This document shows, one piece after another, positions 17,166 through 58,589 of a DNA stretch of 64,000 nucleotides. The stretch is taken from the NCBI RefSeq assembly GCF_963921235.1, contig NC_086122.1, positions 30,690,001 to 30,754,000 of the forward strand, read 5' to 3'. This DNA comes from Mobula hypostoma. Lineage: Eukaryota. The position numbers and the translations under genes were made by a program. How positions within the stretch are numbered: position 1 is the first letter of the stretch; the number at the start of each line of letters is the position of its first letter. A model generated the notes under the pieces. It had not been told where the DNA came from. It made no database searches and saw only the letters and a program-made list of their open reading frames with translations.

Positions 17166-17385
17166 TGTTATGTTTTGTAATTTCAAAACATTAAAACTTA
17201 TTCAAAGGAAGACACGGGAGTCCGAAATGTGACTCGACTTCGTGTTTACTTTAAGTGAGCCGCGCACGTGTCACGTGGTAGCGTGTTGACGTATTAAAAC
17301 ATATAACCCATAATTACCTCTTTAAATGAATAAGAATGCTTAATCAAACAATATACAAGATTACTCAAATATTAAATACACAACA
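17166..17385 (-). mobile_element. Solo LTR related to the 10886-12520 element
   Basis: TGTT...AACA termini, shared aagaatgcttaatcaaacaatat block, imperfect 5-bp TSD aagtg/aaatg. Confidence 0.75.
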
Positions 17386-26203: not shown

Positions 26204-27023
26204 CTTTTTGTGTTAAGTGAATAGATCTTCCCCTTGATCTGCTTCGACTTCTGTGTGAAGAATGGGTTCTGTACATAAAACTATGGTAGTTCCTTGGACG
26301 CTTGGATGAAAATCTTGACCTTGATCCTGAGCGGGATCTTCTGTACCTCAAGCTAGACCTAGATCTTGATCGGTACCTGAGGGGTGACCGATACGACATA
26401 TGATATCTTGATCTTCGGTAACAAGACCTTGAGCAGCTTCGAGACCGGGATCTTGAATGGGTTCCTCTTGATCTTTTGTATCTCTTCTCACGTGATGCAC
26501 ATCTTGACCTTGAAGCCGAATTAGTGTATTTTGAACTTGATCGGTACCTTTTTAATGAGGACACAGAACCCAAATAGGAACTGCCTGACGAGGACACCGA
26601 ACTTGATCTGGAACTGCCAGAAGAGGACATTGAATCTGACTGAGAGCTACCAGAAGATGAGACTGAACTGGAACGAGAGCTACAGGATGACGATACCGAA
26701 CTCGATCGAGAGCAACTCGATGATGACATCGAACCAGATCGTGAGCTGGCAGAGGATGAAACAGAATCTGACCGAGAGGTAGCAGAAGATGAGCAACAAC
26801 TTCCCAAAGATGATACTGAACCTGACTTCAAGATTTTGCATTTCTGATAGCCTGGAGTTCTGGACCGTGACACTCTCTTACACTTTTGAGGCTTATCTGA
26901 AGCAAGACACAATTCATCCACACCAATTGCAATTTTCTCAGCCTTCTTCTTCTGTATACTGCACCTATTTGTTCCCCACTTCATTTCAGACATTTGTTCA
27001 CGTTCCAGATTATGCAAATGCAT
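26204..27023 (-). CDS. RSRP1: RSRP1 first coding exon, Ser- and Arg/Ser-rich region
   Basis: (CT)n-cccctgccccag acceptor at 27030-27029, ATG at 27023, RS-rich ORF ending RSRGRSIHLTQK with donor gtagaa at 26203. The start codon choice (27023 vs in-frame 27149) is uncertain. Confidence 0.88.
26541..26771 (-). repeat. Coding 33-nt tandem repeat (7 units, consensus SxSVSSSGSSR) in RSRP1
   Basis: SDSVSSSASSR/SGSMSSSSCSR/SSSVSSSCSSR/SSSVSSSGSSQ/SDSMSSSGSSR/SSSVSSSGSSY/LGSVSSLKRYR. Confidence 0.85.
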
Positions 27024-50623: not shown

Positions 50624-51900
50624 TTCAAATACAACATTGCTTCAGCAAGAATGGCAGAGCAAAGAGTTTCATGGCAATGTTGTTTTTTTCCATTTTAAAT
50701 CTAACCAAAGTTAAGATTTTCTATCGAACTTCAAATATGAACGTCAGTGACAAAGAATAACAATCTTCCCATCTCCATTACATCAAACAAACACAATGTC
50801 ATTATCAGGCTAGATTTCATTCAACAGTTCAACAGAAGTTGGATTTGAACTGTGATGATGTAGATTTAAGTGGATGCTATGATTGAGTCAAGCATGAACA
50901 TATTTCATTGGAAACAGCATGGTACACTAATTAGAATGTTCCACAATAAATATTAGCTGGAAACATTCCTCTAGATGCCTTAATTTTGATGGCATGGTTG
51001 AATTTTTAGCAGAACAAACTACTCTTTCAGTTAAATACAAGTGCTAGAAATTCAAATACACTTCACAAAGAGGGAATCTCATACATAGACAATCAGATGT
51101 GAATTGGTACTGTTTTAAACAACTTATCATGCGGTGCTGGAAGATTGTGGGTTCAACTGCCAAAGCAGAGATTACCATCCCCACTGTCACTTCATTCAAA
51201 GCTGTTTCGATTGGTTAATGGTTCCAGTCAAGTTTCTGCCAAAATATCAAGCAGTTAAAGAAAATTAGGTCAACCAAAGAATGTTTATTACAAACTAAAA
51301 AATTATATATCCAATGTTACAAGATTTCAAAACAAAGTATAACCAATTCGTGTCTTTTAACAACAGTGTACTTCAAGCAACGCTTTCCAGTCAGTTGATT
51401 CATCTGCTTAAAAGGCAAATTTAAAACGTCAATATTTTGACTAATTGCCTTATACAGTTGGGTCAATCACCTCCTGTGGATTTGGGGGTCTTCAACTCTG
51501 TATAAGTTTTAAACCCTGAACAGAACAAGGATTTTCAACCATACATTTTTTAAAATTTTCAGGCCAAAATAATGTGGCACCGAATGAATGGACAATTAGA
51601 ATCTCAAAAATACACTGGGGGAAATAGCAATTGTACAACTTCTTAAAAAAGTAACACACAACCCGGCCCTTTCCTCCAGTCCGTCAGTAAATCCCTGAAC
51701 TGGACAGTACACGTTAATTCAAACTTGCAAGTGGGAAATCCGCTCACAGTTCGGTTGTTTAATGAAGATGGCGACATGCTTCGACTCTGTAACAAAAGAG
51801 TCAACGAACTGATTTTGAAACGGTGGCGCTGCCGTCCGATTGTCTCGGTTCAGGTTGCGTGAAACTTCGCCCTGGCTAATGTCCCTGGTCCAGGCGTTGC

Positions 51901-52386
51901 TTATCTGGTCGAGCGTACTAATCCAGGTCGTGAAGGCACCACCATCGGCCGGTGAGGCCCCATCATCGGGCCGGGCATCATGGGCACCGGGCCGCTGATG
52001 GGCGGTCTCATCCCCGGGCCCACCAGCATCATACCAGGAGGCGCAGGGCCCATCATCGGCATCATGGGCGGCCCTCCCATTGGGGGTCCGGGCAGGATGG
52101 CGGGCCGCGGCGGCGGCACCCCGACGTTCCCAGGCGGAGGTGGGATGGCGGCCCCAGCCGGGGGCGGCCCGGCCGGCGCCGGGAAGGGGGCCGTGGGCGG
52201 GATTTTGCCCTGGCGGAAGGCGGCCGTGGTCTTGTCGATGAGGCTTTGGGCCTGCTCCTCCATCCATTTCTGATAGTAGTCTTTGACGTTCTCCTTGTGC
52301 TTGCGCCCCTCACAGTGCGTCTTGCGGACGGACGGGGAGTCGTGAGTGAGGTAGGTGTCACAGTAATCGCAGTAATACTTCGGCAT
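51901..52386 (-). CDS. SNRPC: U1 snRNP protein C (U1-C), intronless CDS, 161 aa
   Basis: [57 protein letters not shown]: matrin-type zinc finger with C6, C9, H24, H30 intact, then a Pro/Met/Gly tail. Uninterrupted ORF. AATAAA on minus at 51289-51284. Confidence 0.96.
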
Positions 52387-52425
52387 CTTGTCTCCGTCCG
52401 AGTCCGAGAGCGCGGCTGCGTCACG

Positions 52426-52659
52426 GCACACGTGACTACCCGGAGCCAGACCGCCTCGTAGCACACGTGACTACCAGCCGCCAGACCGCCTCTCAGCACA
52501 CGTGACTACCAGCCGCCAGACCGCCTCTCAGCACACGTGACTACCAGCCGCCAGACCGCCTCTCAGCACACGTGACTACCAGCCGCCAGACCGCCTCTCA
52601 GCACACGTGACTACCAGCCGCCAGACCGCCTCGCAGCACACGTGACTACCCGCCGCCAG
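52426..52659. repeat. 35-bp tandem repeat (~6.7 copies), each unit carrying a CACGTGAC E-box, directly upstream of SNRPC
   Basis: Unit gcacacgtgactaccagccgccagaccgcctctca starts at 52426, 52461, 52496, 52531, 52566, 52601 and 52636. Confidence 0.97.
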
Positions 52660-53304
52660 GCATGCGCAGTAGCTTGCTCCAGCCTCAAGCCATGTGGTTT
52701 TGCCACAATTTAGAATTAAATCGATGGGGAAAATCCTGGAAATGTGAAATACAGACGCAGTGATCCCTGCAGGGATATATAAAGTTAACGCTACAGGTTT
52801 TAACTGAGTGTCTTTAATGCAATATGTGAACTGTTTTCTTTGCCTGAATTGTTGTGTCAGCAATTCAGAATCAGGTTTCATTTCACCGGCGTGTCGTGCA
52901 ATTTATTGTCTTTACAATAGCAGCACAATGTTTTCTAATAATAAAAAAAACAAGAATTACAGGAAGTGTACAGATATATTTACTAGAATTCGTGTTTTGC
53001 ATATTATATAATATATATTAGTTTAAAGAGTAGTGCAAAACTAGAAATAAAAAATAGTGAGGTAGTGTTCATGGGTTCAATGTCCATTCAGAAATCTGAT
53101 GGCAAAAGGGGAAGAAGCTGTTCCCGAATCGTTGACTCTGTGCCTGTATACTTCCTTCCCGATGGTGGCAATCAGGGTCCTTAATGATGGACGCCGCCCT
53201 TTTGAGGCATTGCTCCTTGAAAATGTACTACGAATGGAGATGACTACGTTTACAGTTCTCTGCAGCTTATTTCGATCCTTGCAGTAGCTGCACCCCCCCC
53301 CCCA

Positions 53305-54190
53305 TACTCACGGCTTCAGAGCTGTGTGTCAGACATGGTTATAAGCAGCACTGGGACCCCCCAGGGGACTGTATTGGCTCCCTTCCTGTTTACCTCGGAC
53401 TTTAGATCCAATACTGAGTCATGTCATCTGCAGAAATTCTCTGACGACTCAGCAATAGTTGGATGTATACAGGGAGGGCGGGAGGATGAGGCCCTAGTGC
53501 AGGACTTTGTCAAATGGTGCAAGCTGAATCATCTGCAGCTGAACATCAGTGAGACAACGGAGATGATGATGGACTTTAGGAAGACGAAGCACTTGCCCCT
53601 ATTACTATTGGTGGTGAGGACCTGGGGGTGCACCTGAGTGGACCACCAACACAGAGTCTGTGTACAAGAAGGGCCAGAGTCACCTCTACTTCCTGAGGAG
53701 ACCGAGGTCCTTTGAAGTGTGCAGGCCTCTCCTTCGCGTGTCCTACTCGCCTGTTGTCGCCAGTACAATCTTTTATGCAGCGATGTGCTGGGGCCATGGC
53801 ATCAACAAGGGTGATGCCAACAAACTAATTAGAAAGGTTGGTTCTGTTATAGGAGTCAAACTGGACGCACTGGAGGATGTGGTAGAACAAAGGATCCTAC
53901 GGAAAATCCTGACAATTCTGGACAATGTTTCTCACCCTCTGCATGCCACCTTGGCTGAACAGAGGAGTGCTTTTTGTAATAGACTAAAGACAACTGCGCT
54001 GCTCCAAAGAGCACTGTATAAGGTCATTCCAACCCTCGGCCAGGGCAAGTGATGACCCCCCCCCCCCCGTTAGACTGTTTGAGGCAACTTTTTTTAATAC
54101 TTTCTTACTTCTAATATTTGTATATCTGTGCACCTGTAAAGCCACTGTGATACTGTAATTTCCTTTGGGATCAATAAAGTATCTTTCTAT
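53305..54190 (+). mobile_element. Rex1/Babar LINE RT fragment
   Basis: STGTPQGTVLAPFLF, QKFSDDSAIVG, HLQLNISET, LYFLRR. Confidence 0.92.
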
Positions 54191-54219
54191 CTATACCGGA
54201 TGATGACATTACTGTTTCA

Positions 54220-54665
54220 AAAGTCACCAAAAAGTTGCAGAAAACTTGTAAAATTAGTCGGCTCTGTCGTGGGTACTCGCCTCCGTAGTATCCAAGACGT
54301 CTTCAAGGAGCGGTGCCTCAGGAAGGCGGGGGCCATTATTAACGACCCTCACCACCCAGGACATGCTCTCTTCACGCTGTTACCGTCAGGAAGAAGGTAC
54401 AGAACCCTGAAGGCACACACTCAGCGATTCAGAAACAGCTTCTTCCCCTCTGCCATCCGATTCCTAAATGGATATTGAACTCATGAACATTATCTCACTA
54501 CTTTTATTATTTTGCATTACTTAATTTAACTTACTACTTAATAGACATATGTATACTTAATGTAACTCAGTCTTTTTTCTCCATATTTATCATGTATTGC
54601 ATTGTACTACTGCCGTAAAGTTAGCAAATGTCACGACATATGCTGATGATATTAAATTTGATTCT
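54220..54665 (+). mobile_element. Rex/Babar LINE 3' fragment
   Basis: DPHHPGHALFTLLPSGRRYR..FRNSFFPSAIRFLN. Confidence 0.88.
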
Positions 54666-55539: not shown

Positions 55540-55719
55540 GGTGCGCATGCGCACCACTCCCTCCCTCCCTCCGCTTGTTATGCACTGGAGACGGGAGGAT
55601 TGCGTCATGGGGGTGACGCCACCGATCACGTGACGGCCAGCTCCTAGCGGGCATGCGCATCACTCCCTTGCTCGGACGGGGCAGCTGTCTATTGTTTGTC
55701 CGGATTTGTGGGTTGTGAA
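55540..55719 (+). promoter_or_regulatory. TMEM50A: TMEM50A CpG-rich promoter and non-coding exon 1
   Basis: NRF1 palindrome TGCGCATGCGCA 55542-55553, TGCGTCA 55601, CACGTGAC 55627, GCATGCGCA 55651, donor GAA|gtaagt at 55720. Confidence 0.8.
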
Positions 55720-58589
55720 GTAAGTACGGATTGTGAGGGGTTTTTTTGTTTTGGCAAGCCGAAAGTTAGCGTTGACGGTTTTGTTCTTTTCCTACTATCA
55801 ACGTGGCGCACACAATACGGCCATGGATGCGGTTCTAAAATTGGGGTTTTATTGCCCCGGCCGGTGTTGGATTGGTAGAGGTCTGTGGTAACCGCACACC
55901 AGTTTGGAATGACGACGGGCACTCTGCTCGCGGTGGGGGAAATTATCCCGCTTCGTGGCAGAATGGGCTTGTAGCCGTGGAAAATGGACTGGCAGATACC
56001 CAGGAGTGCAAATTGAACGTCATCGTTTGGCGTATGCATACACATTTTCTAGTCTTAAATCTTTGTAGCTGGTATTCATTAAAGTTCTGATGAAGGAATG
56101 CAGACAGGACCTCGACCATGGTTGGCTTAATGATACAGGGAAGGAGGTGAAAGGTCAAGTGAGTAAGAATGTTCTTGGGTGGGAAAGCAACCTGGTGTTT
56201 GCAGATGTGGTGGTGGTATAGTATGATGCTTCTGTGATTTTAGAACTAAGGATTTTACTGAAGTTACTGTAGGAAATTCAGGAAGGTTGAATGTACCCCC
56301 ATATTGGAACCAACAATGTAAATAGAAAAGAAAAGGAGGTTTTCCAGACAGATTTTAAGGAGATGGAACTCAGAATGATAGTATTAGGATTGCTCCCTAT
56401 GTCACATGCCAATAAGAATCAAAATAAGATATTCTAAATAACTATGTGCTCAGAGAAAGTAGAAGAGGATTGGCATTGGGACAATTCTCAGGGATCTCGT
56501 GTATTTTGACTTTCAAAAGGTATCATATGAGGGTATTAAATAAAACTAAAGTCTACAATACTGGGGTAATAAATTTACAATTAGTTAATGGGCAAAAGGC
56601 AAATGGTTGGAATAGATGGTTTATTTTCTCACTTGCGGACCTGAATAGGATATTGAGGAGAAAACTTGTGCCACATTGCAAAGATATGCATAAGCTTGGA
56701 TGGATGGTGGCTGTTCATCGAGTCCAACGATGGTGGGAAACCAGTGCGGTAGAGTTTTTAAAATGGAAAAAGTAGGGCAGTTCCACACTCTTCACCTCAG
56801 AAGTCCGGGACCAGTGATACAAACTGGGGTTGTCTTTGGTTTCAGTGCATGACCATGATATCTTGTATGCTTTGTCGTGCCCTTCCCTCTCCATGGAGTG
56901 TTGCAGTGCTGCCTTCCTAGCTATTGGATCTCACTGTAGATCTCATCTGCCCGGTCCTGCAGAGCTGACTTCACATGCTAGGACAGGAATGTCCCTATCT
57001 CACTGGGCTATGAGGCCGCCAGTGACCCTCGCCTGGTTTAACTGCCTGTCAAAGCGGTGTGGCTGCTAGTACTAGTATCTGTGCTAGTATCTTTCCTGTA
57101 ATACCAAGGGCTCTTTACTTGTTAACTTCAACTGAGATTGCAGTAAATTCAGGGTTGAAGAGTGAGAGGAGTTCCTCAGCGTGTTAAAAGCCTCGATCAG
57201 CTTGTTTCCAGCCCGAGAGGAACTTGACCTTGCCTGAGTTGGATATGAGTCTATTTAAAGGCAAATTGCTTCACTTTTATCAGTTATGGACCGTGCAGTA
57301 CTTGTTATGACCAGTGATCAGGGGCTTGAGTAACACCAAAATAAACATATTCAATTGGAGAAGAGCTGGTAAGAACAGAGCTAATGTGAATAAACTGGAA
57401 TTAAAGCCCTAATTGAACAACAGCACACCATTTACATTGGGAGGTGTTATATCTGCAAATCTAGGTACTTTGCCATGAGGGAGAAACAAAGGGAACTCCG
57501 TAGTTGCAAAAATAATAAAGATCAAAATAGTGGGAGTGGGGGAAGAGCAACTGAAAGATTGATGCAAGTGAGAAGCAGGTCAATTCCAATGTGTTCAGAG
57601 AAGTAAGAAAGGAAATGAGGCAGGGAATAAGCCTGAACAACCTTTAACTTTTAAAAAAAAATATATATATATACTCTAAATTACACTTATTATTATGTGT
57701 TGCAATGTACTGCTGCTGGAAAACAACAAATTTGAAGACATTTTGTGAAGTTCTTCAAGATTCAAGATTGTTTGATGTCATTTCCTGTACACGTGTAAAG
57801 GAGAATGAAACAATTGTCACTCCAGATCCGATACAGCACCAAACAAACACAAAAGATAAAAAATACAATAATAATAAAAAAACACATGTAAATACATAAA
57901 GATAGCTTGTGTACAATGTACGTCAATAAAGTGGTGCTAGGCACAGATCTATACATAAGGTGACTGACAGGAAATTATAAAGTACTGCTGTGATATTAAT
58001 ATGCCGGTGATATTAAACCCTGGTTGTGATTGGTACATTTGAAGAGAGGTGGGAAGGCTTATGAAAAGTGCAGTAATGATTTTGAAACCTATCTCCAGGG
58101 AAGGCAAACTTTGGCTTTGTACATAAATGGGAGAAGCTGGGATAAAAGTAATAAAATCATAAAGGATAAAGATTGAGAAGGCAGAAATAATTATTCTGTT
58201 CAGCCTAGGGCTCAAAGAACAAATGGACAGAGAATGAAAACAATTGGCAAAAAAAAATTCACATGGTTAAAGTGGGGAATGCAAATTCAATTGTGGTATT
58301 ATAACGGAAGCAGAAAGAATTTGCTGGACTATAAAGGGAAGATGAGAAGTGGAGTTTCTAAAAAGGATTTTGTTTTTCAGGATCAGAATGTGGCTGGCAA
58401 ACCCAGCATTTAGAGTCTGGCCCTATTTGTCTTTAAATGCAGTGGTGTAATATATTTCTAAATCATTATTATGTGTGAATTACAAGGGAATCTGCCTTTC
58501 GGGAGTTTCCAAGGAGGTCAAAGGTTTGAGAGGTGCTAACATGTATCCTGGGTGTGAAACTGCAGGCTGTCGCTTGAGTGGTGCTAGTG

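What the first reader, a model, noticed from the sequence alone, without database searches (positions are those of the whole stretch)
52426..52668. SNRPC promoter built from a 35-bp VNTR with seven E-boxes
Seen: seven CACGTGAC motifs at exact 35-bp spacing, starting 40 nt upstream of the ATG, bracketed by TGCGTCA (52417) and GCATGCGCA (52660). Internal units are identical while the outer units diverge, which points to recent expansion. Known: GTCACGTG is the preferred site of USF1/2 and MiT/TFE factors and contains the MYC/CLOCK E-box core; GCATGCGCA is an NRF1-type site. Inference: copy number could tune U1-C dosage and so 5' splice-site choice, possibly under circadian or metabolic bHLH control.
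Basis: partly seen in the sequence, partly recalled or inferred. Interest (0 to 1): 0.78.

Follow-up and report, generated by a model that had tools for sequence, protein, structure and literature searches.

The report
E-box repeat array upstream of SNRPC retrogene
A real 35-base repeat carrying seven identical E-box motifs sits just upstream of an intronless, relocated copy of the spliceosome gene SNRPC in a cartilaginous fish; it is a lineage-specific expansion of an older one-E-box promoter core, and nothing yet shows that the copy number tunes anything.

Summary
There are 6.7 head-to-tail copies of a 35-bp unit at 52426-52659, seven CACGTGAC at exact 35-bp spacing, TGCGTCA at 52417 and GCATGCGCA at 52660. 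The array starts 40 nt from the ATG (52386, minus strand).

This SNRPC is an intronless retrogene lying head-to-head with TMEM50A. That arrangement is shared by sharks, skates and a chimaera. Lamprey and a teleost keep the multi-exon gene between an ETS-domain gene and BLTP3A. The promoter was therefore recruited, not inherited.

With the array collapsed to one unit, the promoter aligns colinearly with a skate's SNRPC promoter (z 6.9). The shared core is an NRF1-like site, 13-14 nt, one TCACGTG, then the ATG. Two skates manage with one E-box. The array is a lineage-specific expansion of a conserved core inside a CpG island (CpG o/e 1.0 against 0.36 for the window).

Three other lineages carry different tandem arrays in the same TMEM50A-SNRPC intergenic region, and one of them has no E-box. 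This suggests a mutation-prone promoter region as much as selection for E-box number.

USF-type binding is plausible but untested. Circadian control, metabolic control and splice-site tuning have no support. The closest known analogue is the human TYMS 28-bp repeat with USF1 sites.

The parts
52426..52659 (-). 35-bp tandem array, 6.7 units. In gene orientation each unit ends in GGTAGTCACGTGTGC. The seven E-box hexamers start at 52429 + 35n on the + strand.
52659..52668 (-). NRF1-like site (GGCATGCGCA on +, TGCGCATGCC in gene orientation), 14 nt upstream of the distal E-box. The same site and spacing (13-14 nt) occur in two skates and the elephant shark.
52417..52423 (-). TGCGTCA (TGACGCA in gene orientation), a CRE/ATF-like heptamer between the proximal E-box and the ATG. 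It is not conserved as such in skates.
52387..52425 (-). Unique leader between the array and the ATG, ending in GACAAGATG as in skates. The TSS probably lies here or within the array (inferred, not measured).
51901..52386 (-). Uninterrupted U1-C (SNRPC) coding sequence, 161 aa plus stop.
   Evidence: zf-U1, E 6e-23; aligns 1-160 to human U1-C, E 1e-69
51284..51900 (-). Probable 3'UTR ending at AATAAA (51289-51284). No poly(A) remnant is visible.
   Evidence: CpG o/e 0.83
55601..55659 (+). TMEM50A core promoter with the same three motifs in the same order on the + strand: TGCGTCA at 55601, TCACGTGAC at 55626, GGCATGCGCA at 55650. A full NRF1 palindrome lies at 55543-55552.
   Evidence: orthologous to the skate TMEM50A promoter, z 11.2
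55660..55719 (+). Probable non-coding exon 1 of TMEM50A, followed by a GTAAGT donor at 55720.
   Evidence: inferred from conservation with the skate and from the donor site
53326..53637 (+). Reverse-transcriptase fragment within the 3 kb that separates the two promoter modules.
   Evidence: RVT_1, E 0.002, below Pfam's cut-off

Best explanation
The array is a lineage-specific minisatellite. It formed by tandem duplication of a 35-bp piece of the core promoter of an ancient SNRPC retrogene, and that piece happened to contain the promoter's single conserved E-box.

Shown: the gene is intronless and relocated next to TMEM50A in all cartilaginous fishes sampled. The ancestral core is an NRF1-like site, 13-14 nt, TCACGTG, then 50-90 nt to the ATG. 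Here that core carries seven E-boxes instead of one. The region is a CpG island.

Inferred: the E-boxes bind a T-flank-preferring bHLH-zipper factor, most likely USF1/2, with TFE/MITF or BHLHE40 as alternatives. Together with NRF1 they drive constitutive transcription that starts in or just downstream of the array. The extra copies probably raise or buffer promoter strength modestly, or are nearly neutral. I see no reason to think the number is set by selection, or that it confers rhythmic or metabolic control.
For: The array and its motifs are real.

The gene is intronless: 161 aa, zf-U1, full-length match to human U1-C. The gene span equals the CDS length in Chiloscyllium, Callorhinchus, Amblyraja, both Scyliorhinus species and Rhinoraja. 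A divergent TMEM50-family gene lies within the fetched flank in four of these species, and a MAPEG gene lies downstream in all six.

Lamprey and teleost U1-C are multi-exon, with ATGCCGAAG followed by a GT donor, and sit between an ETS/SAM_PNT gene and BLTP3A.

With the array collapsed, the promoter aligns colinearly to the Rhinoraja SNRPC promoter from the NRF1-like site to the ATG: z 6.9, 1 of 2000 dinucleotide shuffles. It also aligns to Amblyraja (z 2.7) and to a Callorhinchus module (z 3.3).

The skates have exactly one E-box and no array.

CpG o/e is 1.01 in the array and 0.84 in the CDS, against 0.36 for the window.

20 of 21 chondrichthyan E-boxes in these modules read TCACGTG on the SNRPC-sense strand. 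All 7 substitutions between units fall outside GGTAGTCACGTGTGC (P about 0.02, block chosen post hoc).

Known precedents are the TYMS 28-bp repeat with USF1 sites (PMC7712088) and retrocopies that use a neighbour's bidirectional promoter (PMC4772013).
Against: The TSS could lie upstream of the array.

The substitution argument is weak: P is 0.16 if only the 8-bp GTCACGTG is counted.

Factor identity rests on flanking-base preferences that I recall from the literature, not on any test here.

Only two skates and one chimaera could be read as DNA. Shark loci were too large to fetch, so the age of the array is not known beyond 'absent in skates and chimaera'.

The species identity (earlier notes say Mobula) was not verified.
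Confidence: 0.6

Rival explanations
1. The array is a neutral by-product. CpG-island promoter DNA in this intergenic region is prone to tandem duplication, and the array persists because it does no harm. Seven E-boxes mean nothing beyond what one would do.
For: Independent arrays with different units occur in the same TMEM50A-SNRPC region. Amblyraja has 68/69 bp x 3.1 at 97% identity. Rhinoraja has 69 bp x 3.1 at 99% identity, covering a different segment that has an NRF1-like site but no E-box. Callorhinchus has units of 62-69 bp in about 2.3 copies. In both skate loci and in the window, these are the only strong minisatellites. Skates express the same gene from one E-box.
Against: Perfect retention of the E-box and its flanks in all seven units, including the diverged outer ones, hints at constraint, but only weakly. 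Landing in promoter modules three or four times could also reflect selection rather than mutation bias.
Confidence: 0.3
2. One reading: copy number sets U1-C dosage and hence 5' splice-site choice, under circadian (CLOCK:BMAL1) or metabolic (MYC/MondoA/TFE) control.
For: CACGTGA-type E-boxes can be bound by these factors (recalled knowledge). Promoter repeat number changes expression at other genes (PMC7712088, PMC4857002).
Against: There are no expression data. Hexamers are 29 nt apart, not the 6-7 nt of circadian E1-E2 pairs or the 5 nt of carbohydrate-response elements (recalled knowledge, compared). A T flank at -4 disfavours MYC-MAX (recalled knowledge; flanks). Orthologues with one E-box exist. 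Any link to splice-site choice is speculation several steps removed.
Confidence: 0.07
3. The array is transcribed. The TSS lies at or upstream of the NRF1-like site, and the repeats form a long GC-rich 5'UTR that acts on translation or RNA stability.
For: NRF1-type promoters often start close to the site (recalled knowledge). The TYMS repeat is itself partly 5'UTR. Only 39 nt of unique sequence separate the array from the ATG.
Against: A 284-nt leader would fold at -133 kcal/mol, which is unfavourable for an abundant housekeeping protein. It is no more structured than shuffles (z -0.04), so there is no sign of a selected RNA structure. In Rhinoraja the single E-box is only about 50 nt from the ATG, which implies short leaders in this gene.
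Confidence: 0.15
4. Assembly artefact: the true locus has fewer or more units.
For: Tandem arrays can be mis-sized, and no reads could be laid here.
Against: The array is only 234 bp and the record is a 40.7 Mb chromosome-scale sequence. The diverged edge units give it unique anchors. Comparable arrays stand in three independent assemblies of other species.
Confidence: 0.04

Closest known systems
Human TYMS enhancer-region repeat (TSER, 28-bp VNTR with USF1 E-boxes)
   Same: Head-to-tail units of about 30 bp end next to the start codon of a housekeeping gene. Individual units carry an E-box bound by USF1, and alleles differ in the number of sites, which has been tied to transcription (PMC7712088).
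   Different: TYMS units carry the variant CACTTG and usually number 2-3 (up to 5 sites per person in that cohort). Here there are seven canonical CACGTG sites. Polymorphism, USF binding and any effect on expression are documented for TYMS and untested here.
Retrocopies expressed from a neighbour's bidirectional CpG promoter
   Same: An intronless copy of a multi-exon gene lies head-to-head with an unrelated gene and next to that gene's CpG-island promoter motifs (PMC4772013). In the elephant shark the two genes' starts appear to be about 400 bp apart.
   Different: The mammalian cases are young duplicates alongside a living parent. This one is shared by chimaera, sharks and rays, and is the only U1-C found for them in the protein search. 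In the window the two genes are 3.2 kb apart and each has its own module. Paralogy of the two modules is only weakly supported (z 2.6).
Promoter tandem repeats as expression modifiers
   Same: Repeats are concentrated at gene starts, and length variation acts as an expression or methylation QTL (PMC4857002, PMC3566118).
   Different: Those surveys are human and mostly cover short units. No population data exist for this array.
Circadian E1-E2 elements and CLEAR elements
   Same: Both have a CACGTG core. One half-site reads GTCACGTG, as in the CLEAR motif.
   Different: The spacing is 29 nt rather than 6-7 nt. The second half-site is CACACGTG, so the 10-bp CLEAR palindrome is incomplete. The gene is not lysosomal. 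The definitions of these elements are recalled knowledge, not tested here.

Membership tests
Promoter/5'UTR VNTR carrying transcription-factor sites (TYMS TSER type) | Head-to-tail units of roughly 10-100 bp | tested here: met
   Period 35, 6.7 copies, 96% matches
Promoter/5'UTR VNTR carrying transcription-factor sites (TYMS TSER type) | Lies directly upstream of the start codon, within the promoter or leader | tested here: met
   The array starts 40 nt from the ATG and lies in a CpG island. The position is shown, but the TSS was not mapped.
Promoter/5'UTR VNTR carrying transcription-factor sites (TYMS TSER type) | Each unit carries a recognisable factor motif | tested here: met
   Seven identical TAGTCACGTGTGC sites. 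This shows the motif only, not binding.
Promoter/5'UTR VNTR carrying transcription-factor sites (TYMS TSER type) | Copy number varies among individuals | not testable with these tools
The metagenome scan found nothing.
Promoter/5'UTR VNTR carrying transcription-factor sites (TYMS TSER type) | Copy number changes expression | not testable with these tools
   Needs reporter assays or allele-specific expression.
Retrogene with recruited promoter | Intronless where the parent type has introns | tested here: met
   Continuous ORF. Gene span equals the CDS in six chondrichthyans. Lamprey and teleost genes span 1.5-4.5 kb with an intron after codon 3.
Retrogene with recruited promoter | New genomic location relative to the parent | tested here: met
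   TMEM50 (UPF0220) and MAPEG neighbours, against ETS/SAM_PNT and BLTP3A neighbours in lamprey and teleost.
Retrogene with recruited promoter | Poly(A) remnant and target-site duplications | tested here: not met
   No A-tract after AATAAA, and no flanking direct repeat in the repeat finder. This is expected for an insertion older than the chimaera-elasmobranch split, so it is not informative.
Retrogene with recruited promoter | Promoter shared with or copied from the head-to-head neighbour | tested here: inconclusive
   Same motif order and strand in both modules, but the alignment is only z 2.6. The Callorhinchus arrangement suggests one shared region.
CpG island | GC above 0.5-0.55 and CpG o/e above 0.6 over at least 200-500 bp | tested here: met
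   The bin 52001-52500 has GC 0.67 and o/e 0.88. The array has o/e 1.01. The window has o/e 0.36.
Circadian CLOCK:BMAL1 tandem E-box (E1-E2) | Two E-boxes separated by 6-7 nt | tested here: not met
   Hexamers are 29 nt apart throughout. The definition is from recalled literature.
CLEAR element (TFEB/TFE3) | 10-bp palindrome GTCACGTGAC | tested here: not met
   Units read GTCACGTGTG, 8 of 10. The T-flanked half-site is still compatible with MiT/TFE binding.

The most novel reading that the evidence does not exclude
An essential spliceosome gene lost all its introns by retroposition more than 400 million years ago, and with them any intron-dependent boost or splicing-based autoregulation. It has since relied on a borrowed NRF1/E-box module. 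Repeated independent tandem amplification of that module in chimaera, skates and this ray or shark would then be selection adjusting the output of the shared TMEM50A-SNRPC control region, with this seven-E-box array as the extreme case and copy number setting U1-C dosage.
Probability: 0.12. Interest if true: 0.65.

Novelty: new member of a known kind. Interest (0 to 1): 0.4.

Why it matters
Taken alone, this is one more promoter minisatellite that carries factor sites, a class well known from TYMS and other human genes.

The setting adds some interest. U1-C helps select 5' splice sites. In cartilaginous fishes it appears to be supplied by an intronless retrogene that took over from the multi-exon gene and runs on a recruited NRF1/E-box promoter beside TMEM50A.

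The same short control region has been tandemly amplified at least four separate times in different lineages. That makes it a compact natural system for asking whether promoter repeats arise from mutation bias in open CpG-rich DNA or from selection on output. If copy number varies among individuals and tracks SNRPC mRNA, it would be a rare non-human example of a dosage-setting E-box VNTR at a core splicing factor.

Tried and rejected

Rfam gathering scan of the whole window: no RNA family.

RNA structure of the array as a leader: stable but not above shuffles, so a structured-RNA reading was dropped.

Metagenome scan for a 46-nt stretch spanning one unit junction: no match.

Shark orthologous DNA (Chiloscyllium, both Scyliorhinus species) could not be fetched because the files were too large. 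The array can therefore only be dated as absent from two skates and the elephant shark.

Paralogy between the SNRPC-side and TMEM50A-side modules: motif order and strand agree, but alignment scores are weak (21 of 1000 and 54 of 2000 shuffles reach them). I treat it as a lead, not a result.

A 5'UTR intron bringing in a distant promoter: there is no polypyrimidine tract before the only AG between the array and the ATG (read), so I judge it unlikely.

Literature: no paper on an intronless SNRPC in cartilaginous fishes in the held library.

The sigma-70 promoter scanner was not used because it does not apply to a vertebrate.

Full report
**Observation.** The sequence at 52426-52659 is a clean tandem array with period 35, 6.7 copies, 96% matches and no indels. 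CACGTGAC occurs seven times at exact 35-bp steps from 52429 to 52639. The 64 kb window holds nine copies where 0.35 are expected. TGCGTCA (52417) and GCATGCGCA (52660) flank the array. Four central units are identical and a fifth differs by one base. The unit nearest the gene differs at five positions, and the farthest unit is partial and merges into the GCATGCGCA site. No other minisatellite of comparable quality exists in the window.

**The gene.** The coding sequence is on the minus strand, with the ATG at 52386 and the stop at 51903-51901. It encodes 161 residues without interruption. It carries the U1 zinc finger (PF06220, E 6e-23) and aligns over residues 1-160 with human U1-C (E 1e-69). 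An AATAAA lies at 51289-51284. The exact protein is encoded once, on a 40.7 Mb record of assembly GCA_963921235.1. Its nearest relatives are the U1-C proteins of sharks (96-97%), skates (93%) and the elephant shark (92%). Earlier notes of this scan call the genome a devil ray. I did not verify that.

**A relocated retrogene.** In Chiloscyllium, Callorhinchus, Amblyraja, Scyliorhinus canicula, S. torazame and Rhinoraja, the called gene spans exactly 480-486 bp, which is the coding length. A MAPEG gene lies downstream in all six, and a divergent TMEM50-family gene (Pfam UPF0220) lies upstream within the fetched flank in four of them. The window has the same layout.
- In three lamprey assemblies and a teleost, U1-C spans 1.5-4.5 kb and does not translate straight through.
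- It begins ATGCCGAAG followed by a GT donor.
- It sits between an ETS/SAM_PNT gene and BLTP3A. From memory, that is the arrangement around human SNRPC.

The intronless copy beside TMEM50A is therefore a derived state shared by chimaeras and elasmobranchs. Its promoter cannot be the ancestral SNRPC promoter. No second full-length U1-C from a cartilaginous fish appeared among the best 120 hits. The only extra hit was a shortened Narcine copy. Loss of the parent gene was not tested directly.

**What the array expanded from.** The two skates share a conserved SNRPC core: a GC box, TGCGCATGC, 13 nt, then TCACGTG, then 50-90 nt to GACAAGATG. Unrelated sequence lies upstream, and there is a single E-box and no array. 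In the window, the distal end of the array reads TGCGCATGC, 14 nt, TCACGTG. When I collapse the array to one unit, the promoter aligns colinearly with the Rhinoraja promoter from the NRF1-like site to the ATG (score 37 against 17.3 +/- 2.8; 1 of 2000 dinucleotide shuffles). The matches to Amblyraja (z 2.7) and to a Callorhinchus module with the same 14-nt spacing (z 3.3) are weaker but point the same way. The array is thus a tandem amplification of a 35-bp piece spanning the ancestral E-box with about 14 nt on one side and 15 nt on the other.

**Chromatin proxy.** CpG observed/expected is 1.01 in the array, 0.84 in the coding sequence and 0.83 in the 3'UTR, against 0.36 for the window. The TMEM50A promoter scores 0.77-0.89. 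This is the signature of DNA that stays unmethylated in the germ line, and it fits an active promoter. For the young central units the figure says little.

**Relation to TMEM50A.** The TMEM50A promoter at 55601-55659 has TGCGTCA, TCACGTGAC and GGCATGCGCA in the same order and strand as the flanks and units of the array. It is followed by a probable non-coding exon ending before GTAAGT at 55720. That promoter and exon are clearly orthologous to the skate's (z 11.2). The two modules within the window align only weakly (z 2.6). In the elephant shark, a probable TMEM50A first exon and its NRF1-like/E-box module lie about 400 bp from the SNRPC ATG. That looks like one shared bidirectional region. 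A retrocopy using a head-to-head neighbour's promoter is a documented route (PMC4772013). My inference is that the retrogene landed beside the TMEM50A promoter, and that in elasmobranchs the region later split into two modules separated by inserted DNA. That DNA includes a reverse-transcriptase fragment at 53326-53637. This step is plausible but not shown.

**Recurrent arrays.** The same intergenic region carries other tandem arrays.
- **Amblyraja:** 68/69 bp x 3.1 at 97% identity on the TMEM50A side. Each unit has TGCGCATGCG, a GC box and TCACGTGA.
- **Rhinoraja:** 69 bp x 3.1 at 99% identity, but covering the adjacent TSS-proximal segment, which has an NRF1-like site and no E-box. This segment is single-copy in Amblyraja.
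- **Callorhinchus:** units of 62-69 bp in about 2.3 copies, with TCACGTGA, a GC box and a (TG)n run.

In both skate loci and in the window, these are the only strong minisatellites. The elephant shark locus has another one elsewhere. Four independent events in a few hundred bases of promoter DNA are not chance. Because one array lacks an E-box, they argue for a duplication-prone promoter region at least as much as for selection on E-box number.

**Which factor.** 20 of 21 E-boxes in these chondrichthyan modules read TCACGTG on the SNRPC-sense strand. From the literature as I recall it, a T at that position favours USF and MiT/TFE proteins (and BHLHE40) and disfavours MYC-MAX. USF together with NRF1 is a common housekeeping pairing. 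The array's hexamers are 29 nt apart. That matches neither the 6-7 nt spacing of circadian E1-E2 pairs nor the 5-nt spacing of carbohydrate-response elements. All seven substitutions between units fall outside the 15-nt block around the E-box (P about 0.02). The test is post hoc and drops to P 0.16 for the 8-nt core. The lamprey's ancestral-type promoter also has one CCACGTGAC about 85 nt upstream of the ATG, while the teleost has none. I attach no weight to this.

**Promoter or leader.** If transcription began upstream of the array, the leader would be about 284 nt of GC-rich repeat folding at -133 kcal/mol. It would be no more structured than shuffled sequence. Skate spacing implies short leaders. 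I therefore favour starts within or just downstream of the array, but only 5'-end data can settle it.

**Verdict.** The promoter reading is reasonable, with the caveat that this is a recruited retrogene promoter. The claims about dosage, circadian control and splice-site choice are unsupported. The closest known case is the TYMS 28-bp repeat with USF1 sites next to its start codon (PMC7712088). Promoter repeats as expression modifiers are well described (PMC4857002, PMC3566118). I found no paper on an intronless SNRPC in cartilaginous fishes. I file the array as a new member of a known kind, of moderate interest, mainly because of its setting and the recurrent amplification of the same control region.

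Noticed in passing
window 51901-52386; L001-L003 6001-6486; L004-L007: The intronless SNRPC beside TMEM50A and MAPEG is shared by chimaera, sharks and skates. Lamprey and a teleost keep a multi-exon gene between an ETS/SAM_PNT gene and BLTP3A. No multi-exon U1-C from a cartilaginous fish appeared in the protein search, so the retrogene may have replaced its parent.
   Followed up: partly
L002 2095-2308: The Amblyraja TMEM50A promoter holds a 68/69-bp x 3.1 array at 97% identity. Each unit has an NRF1-like site, a GC box and TCACGTGA.
   Followed up: partly
L003 2020-2235: The Rhinoraja TMEM50A promoter holds a 69-bp x 3.1 array at 99% identity. It covers a different, TSS-proximal segment, probably including exon 1, with no E-box. 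This is an independent event of nearly the same period as in Amblyraja.
   Followed up: partly
L001 5560-5960: The elephant shark intergenic region has five CACGTG sites. Three of them are TCACGTGA, and two of those sit in repeated units of 62-69 bp with (TG)n runs. A probable TMEM50A exon 1 lies only about 400 bp from the SNRPC ATG.
   Followed up: partly
L006 7900-8003 (lamprey): The ancestral-type SNRPC promoter has one CCACGTGAC followed by TATAAGAG about 85 nt upstream of the ATG. The teleost Denticeps has no E-box there.
   Followed up: no
P0089 (Narcine bancroftii): A 111-aa 'U1-C-like' protein lacks the central proline-rich part and has several changes in the zinc finger. It is possibly a decaying second copy of the retrogene.
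   Followed up: no
window 17265-17277: Two CACGTG hexamers are separated by a single T (CACGTGTCACGTG) in a CpG-containing stretch. This may be another promoter.
   Followed up: no
window 26590-26746: An imperfect 33-bp repeat (73-77% matches) lies near the region that earlier notes assign to RSRP1. It may be a coding repeat.
   Followed up: no
window 53326-54478: Open reading frames resemble the reverse-transcriptase and C-terminal parts of a LINE, between the SNRPC and TMEM50A promoter modules. The RVT_1 match is below Pfam's cut-off.
   Followed up: partly
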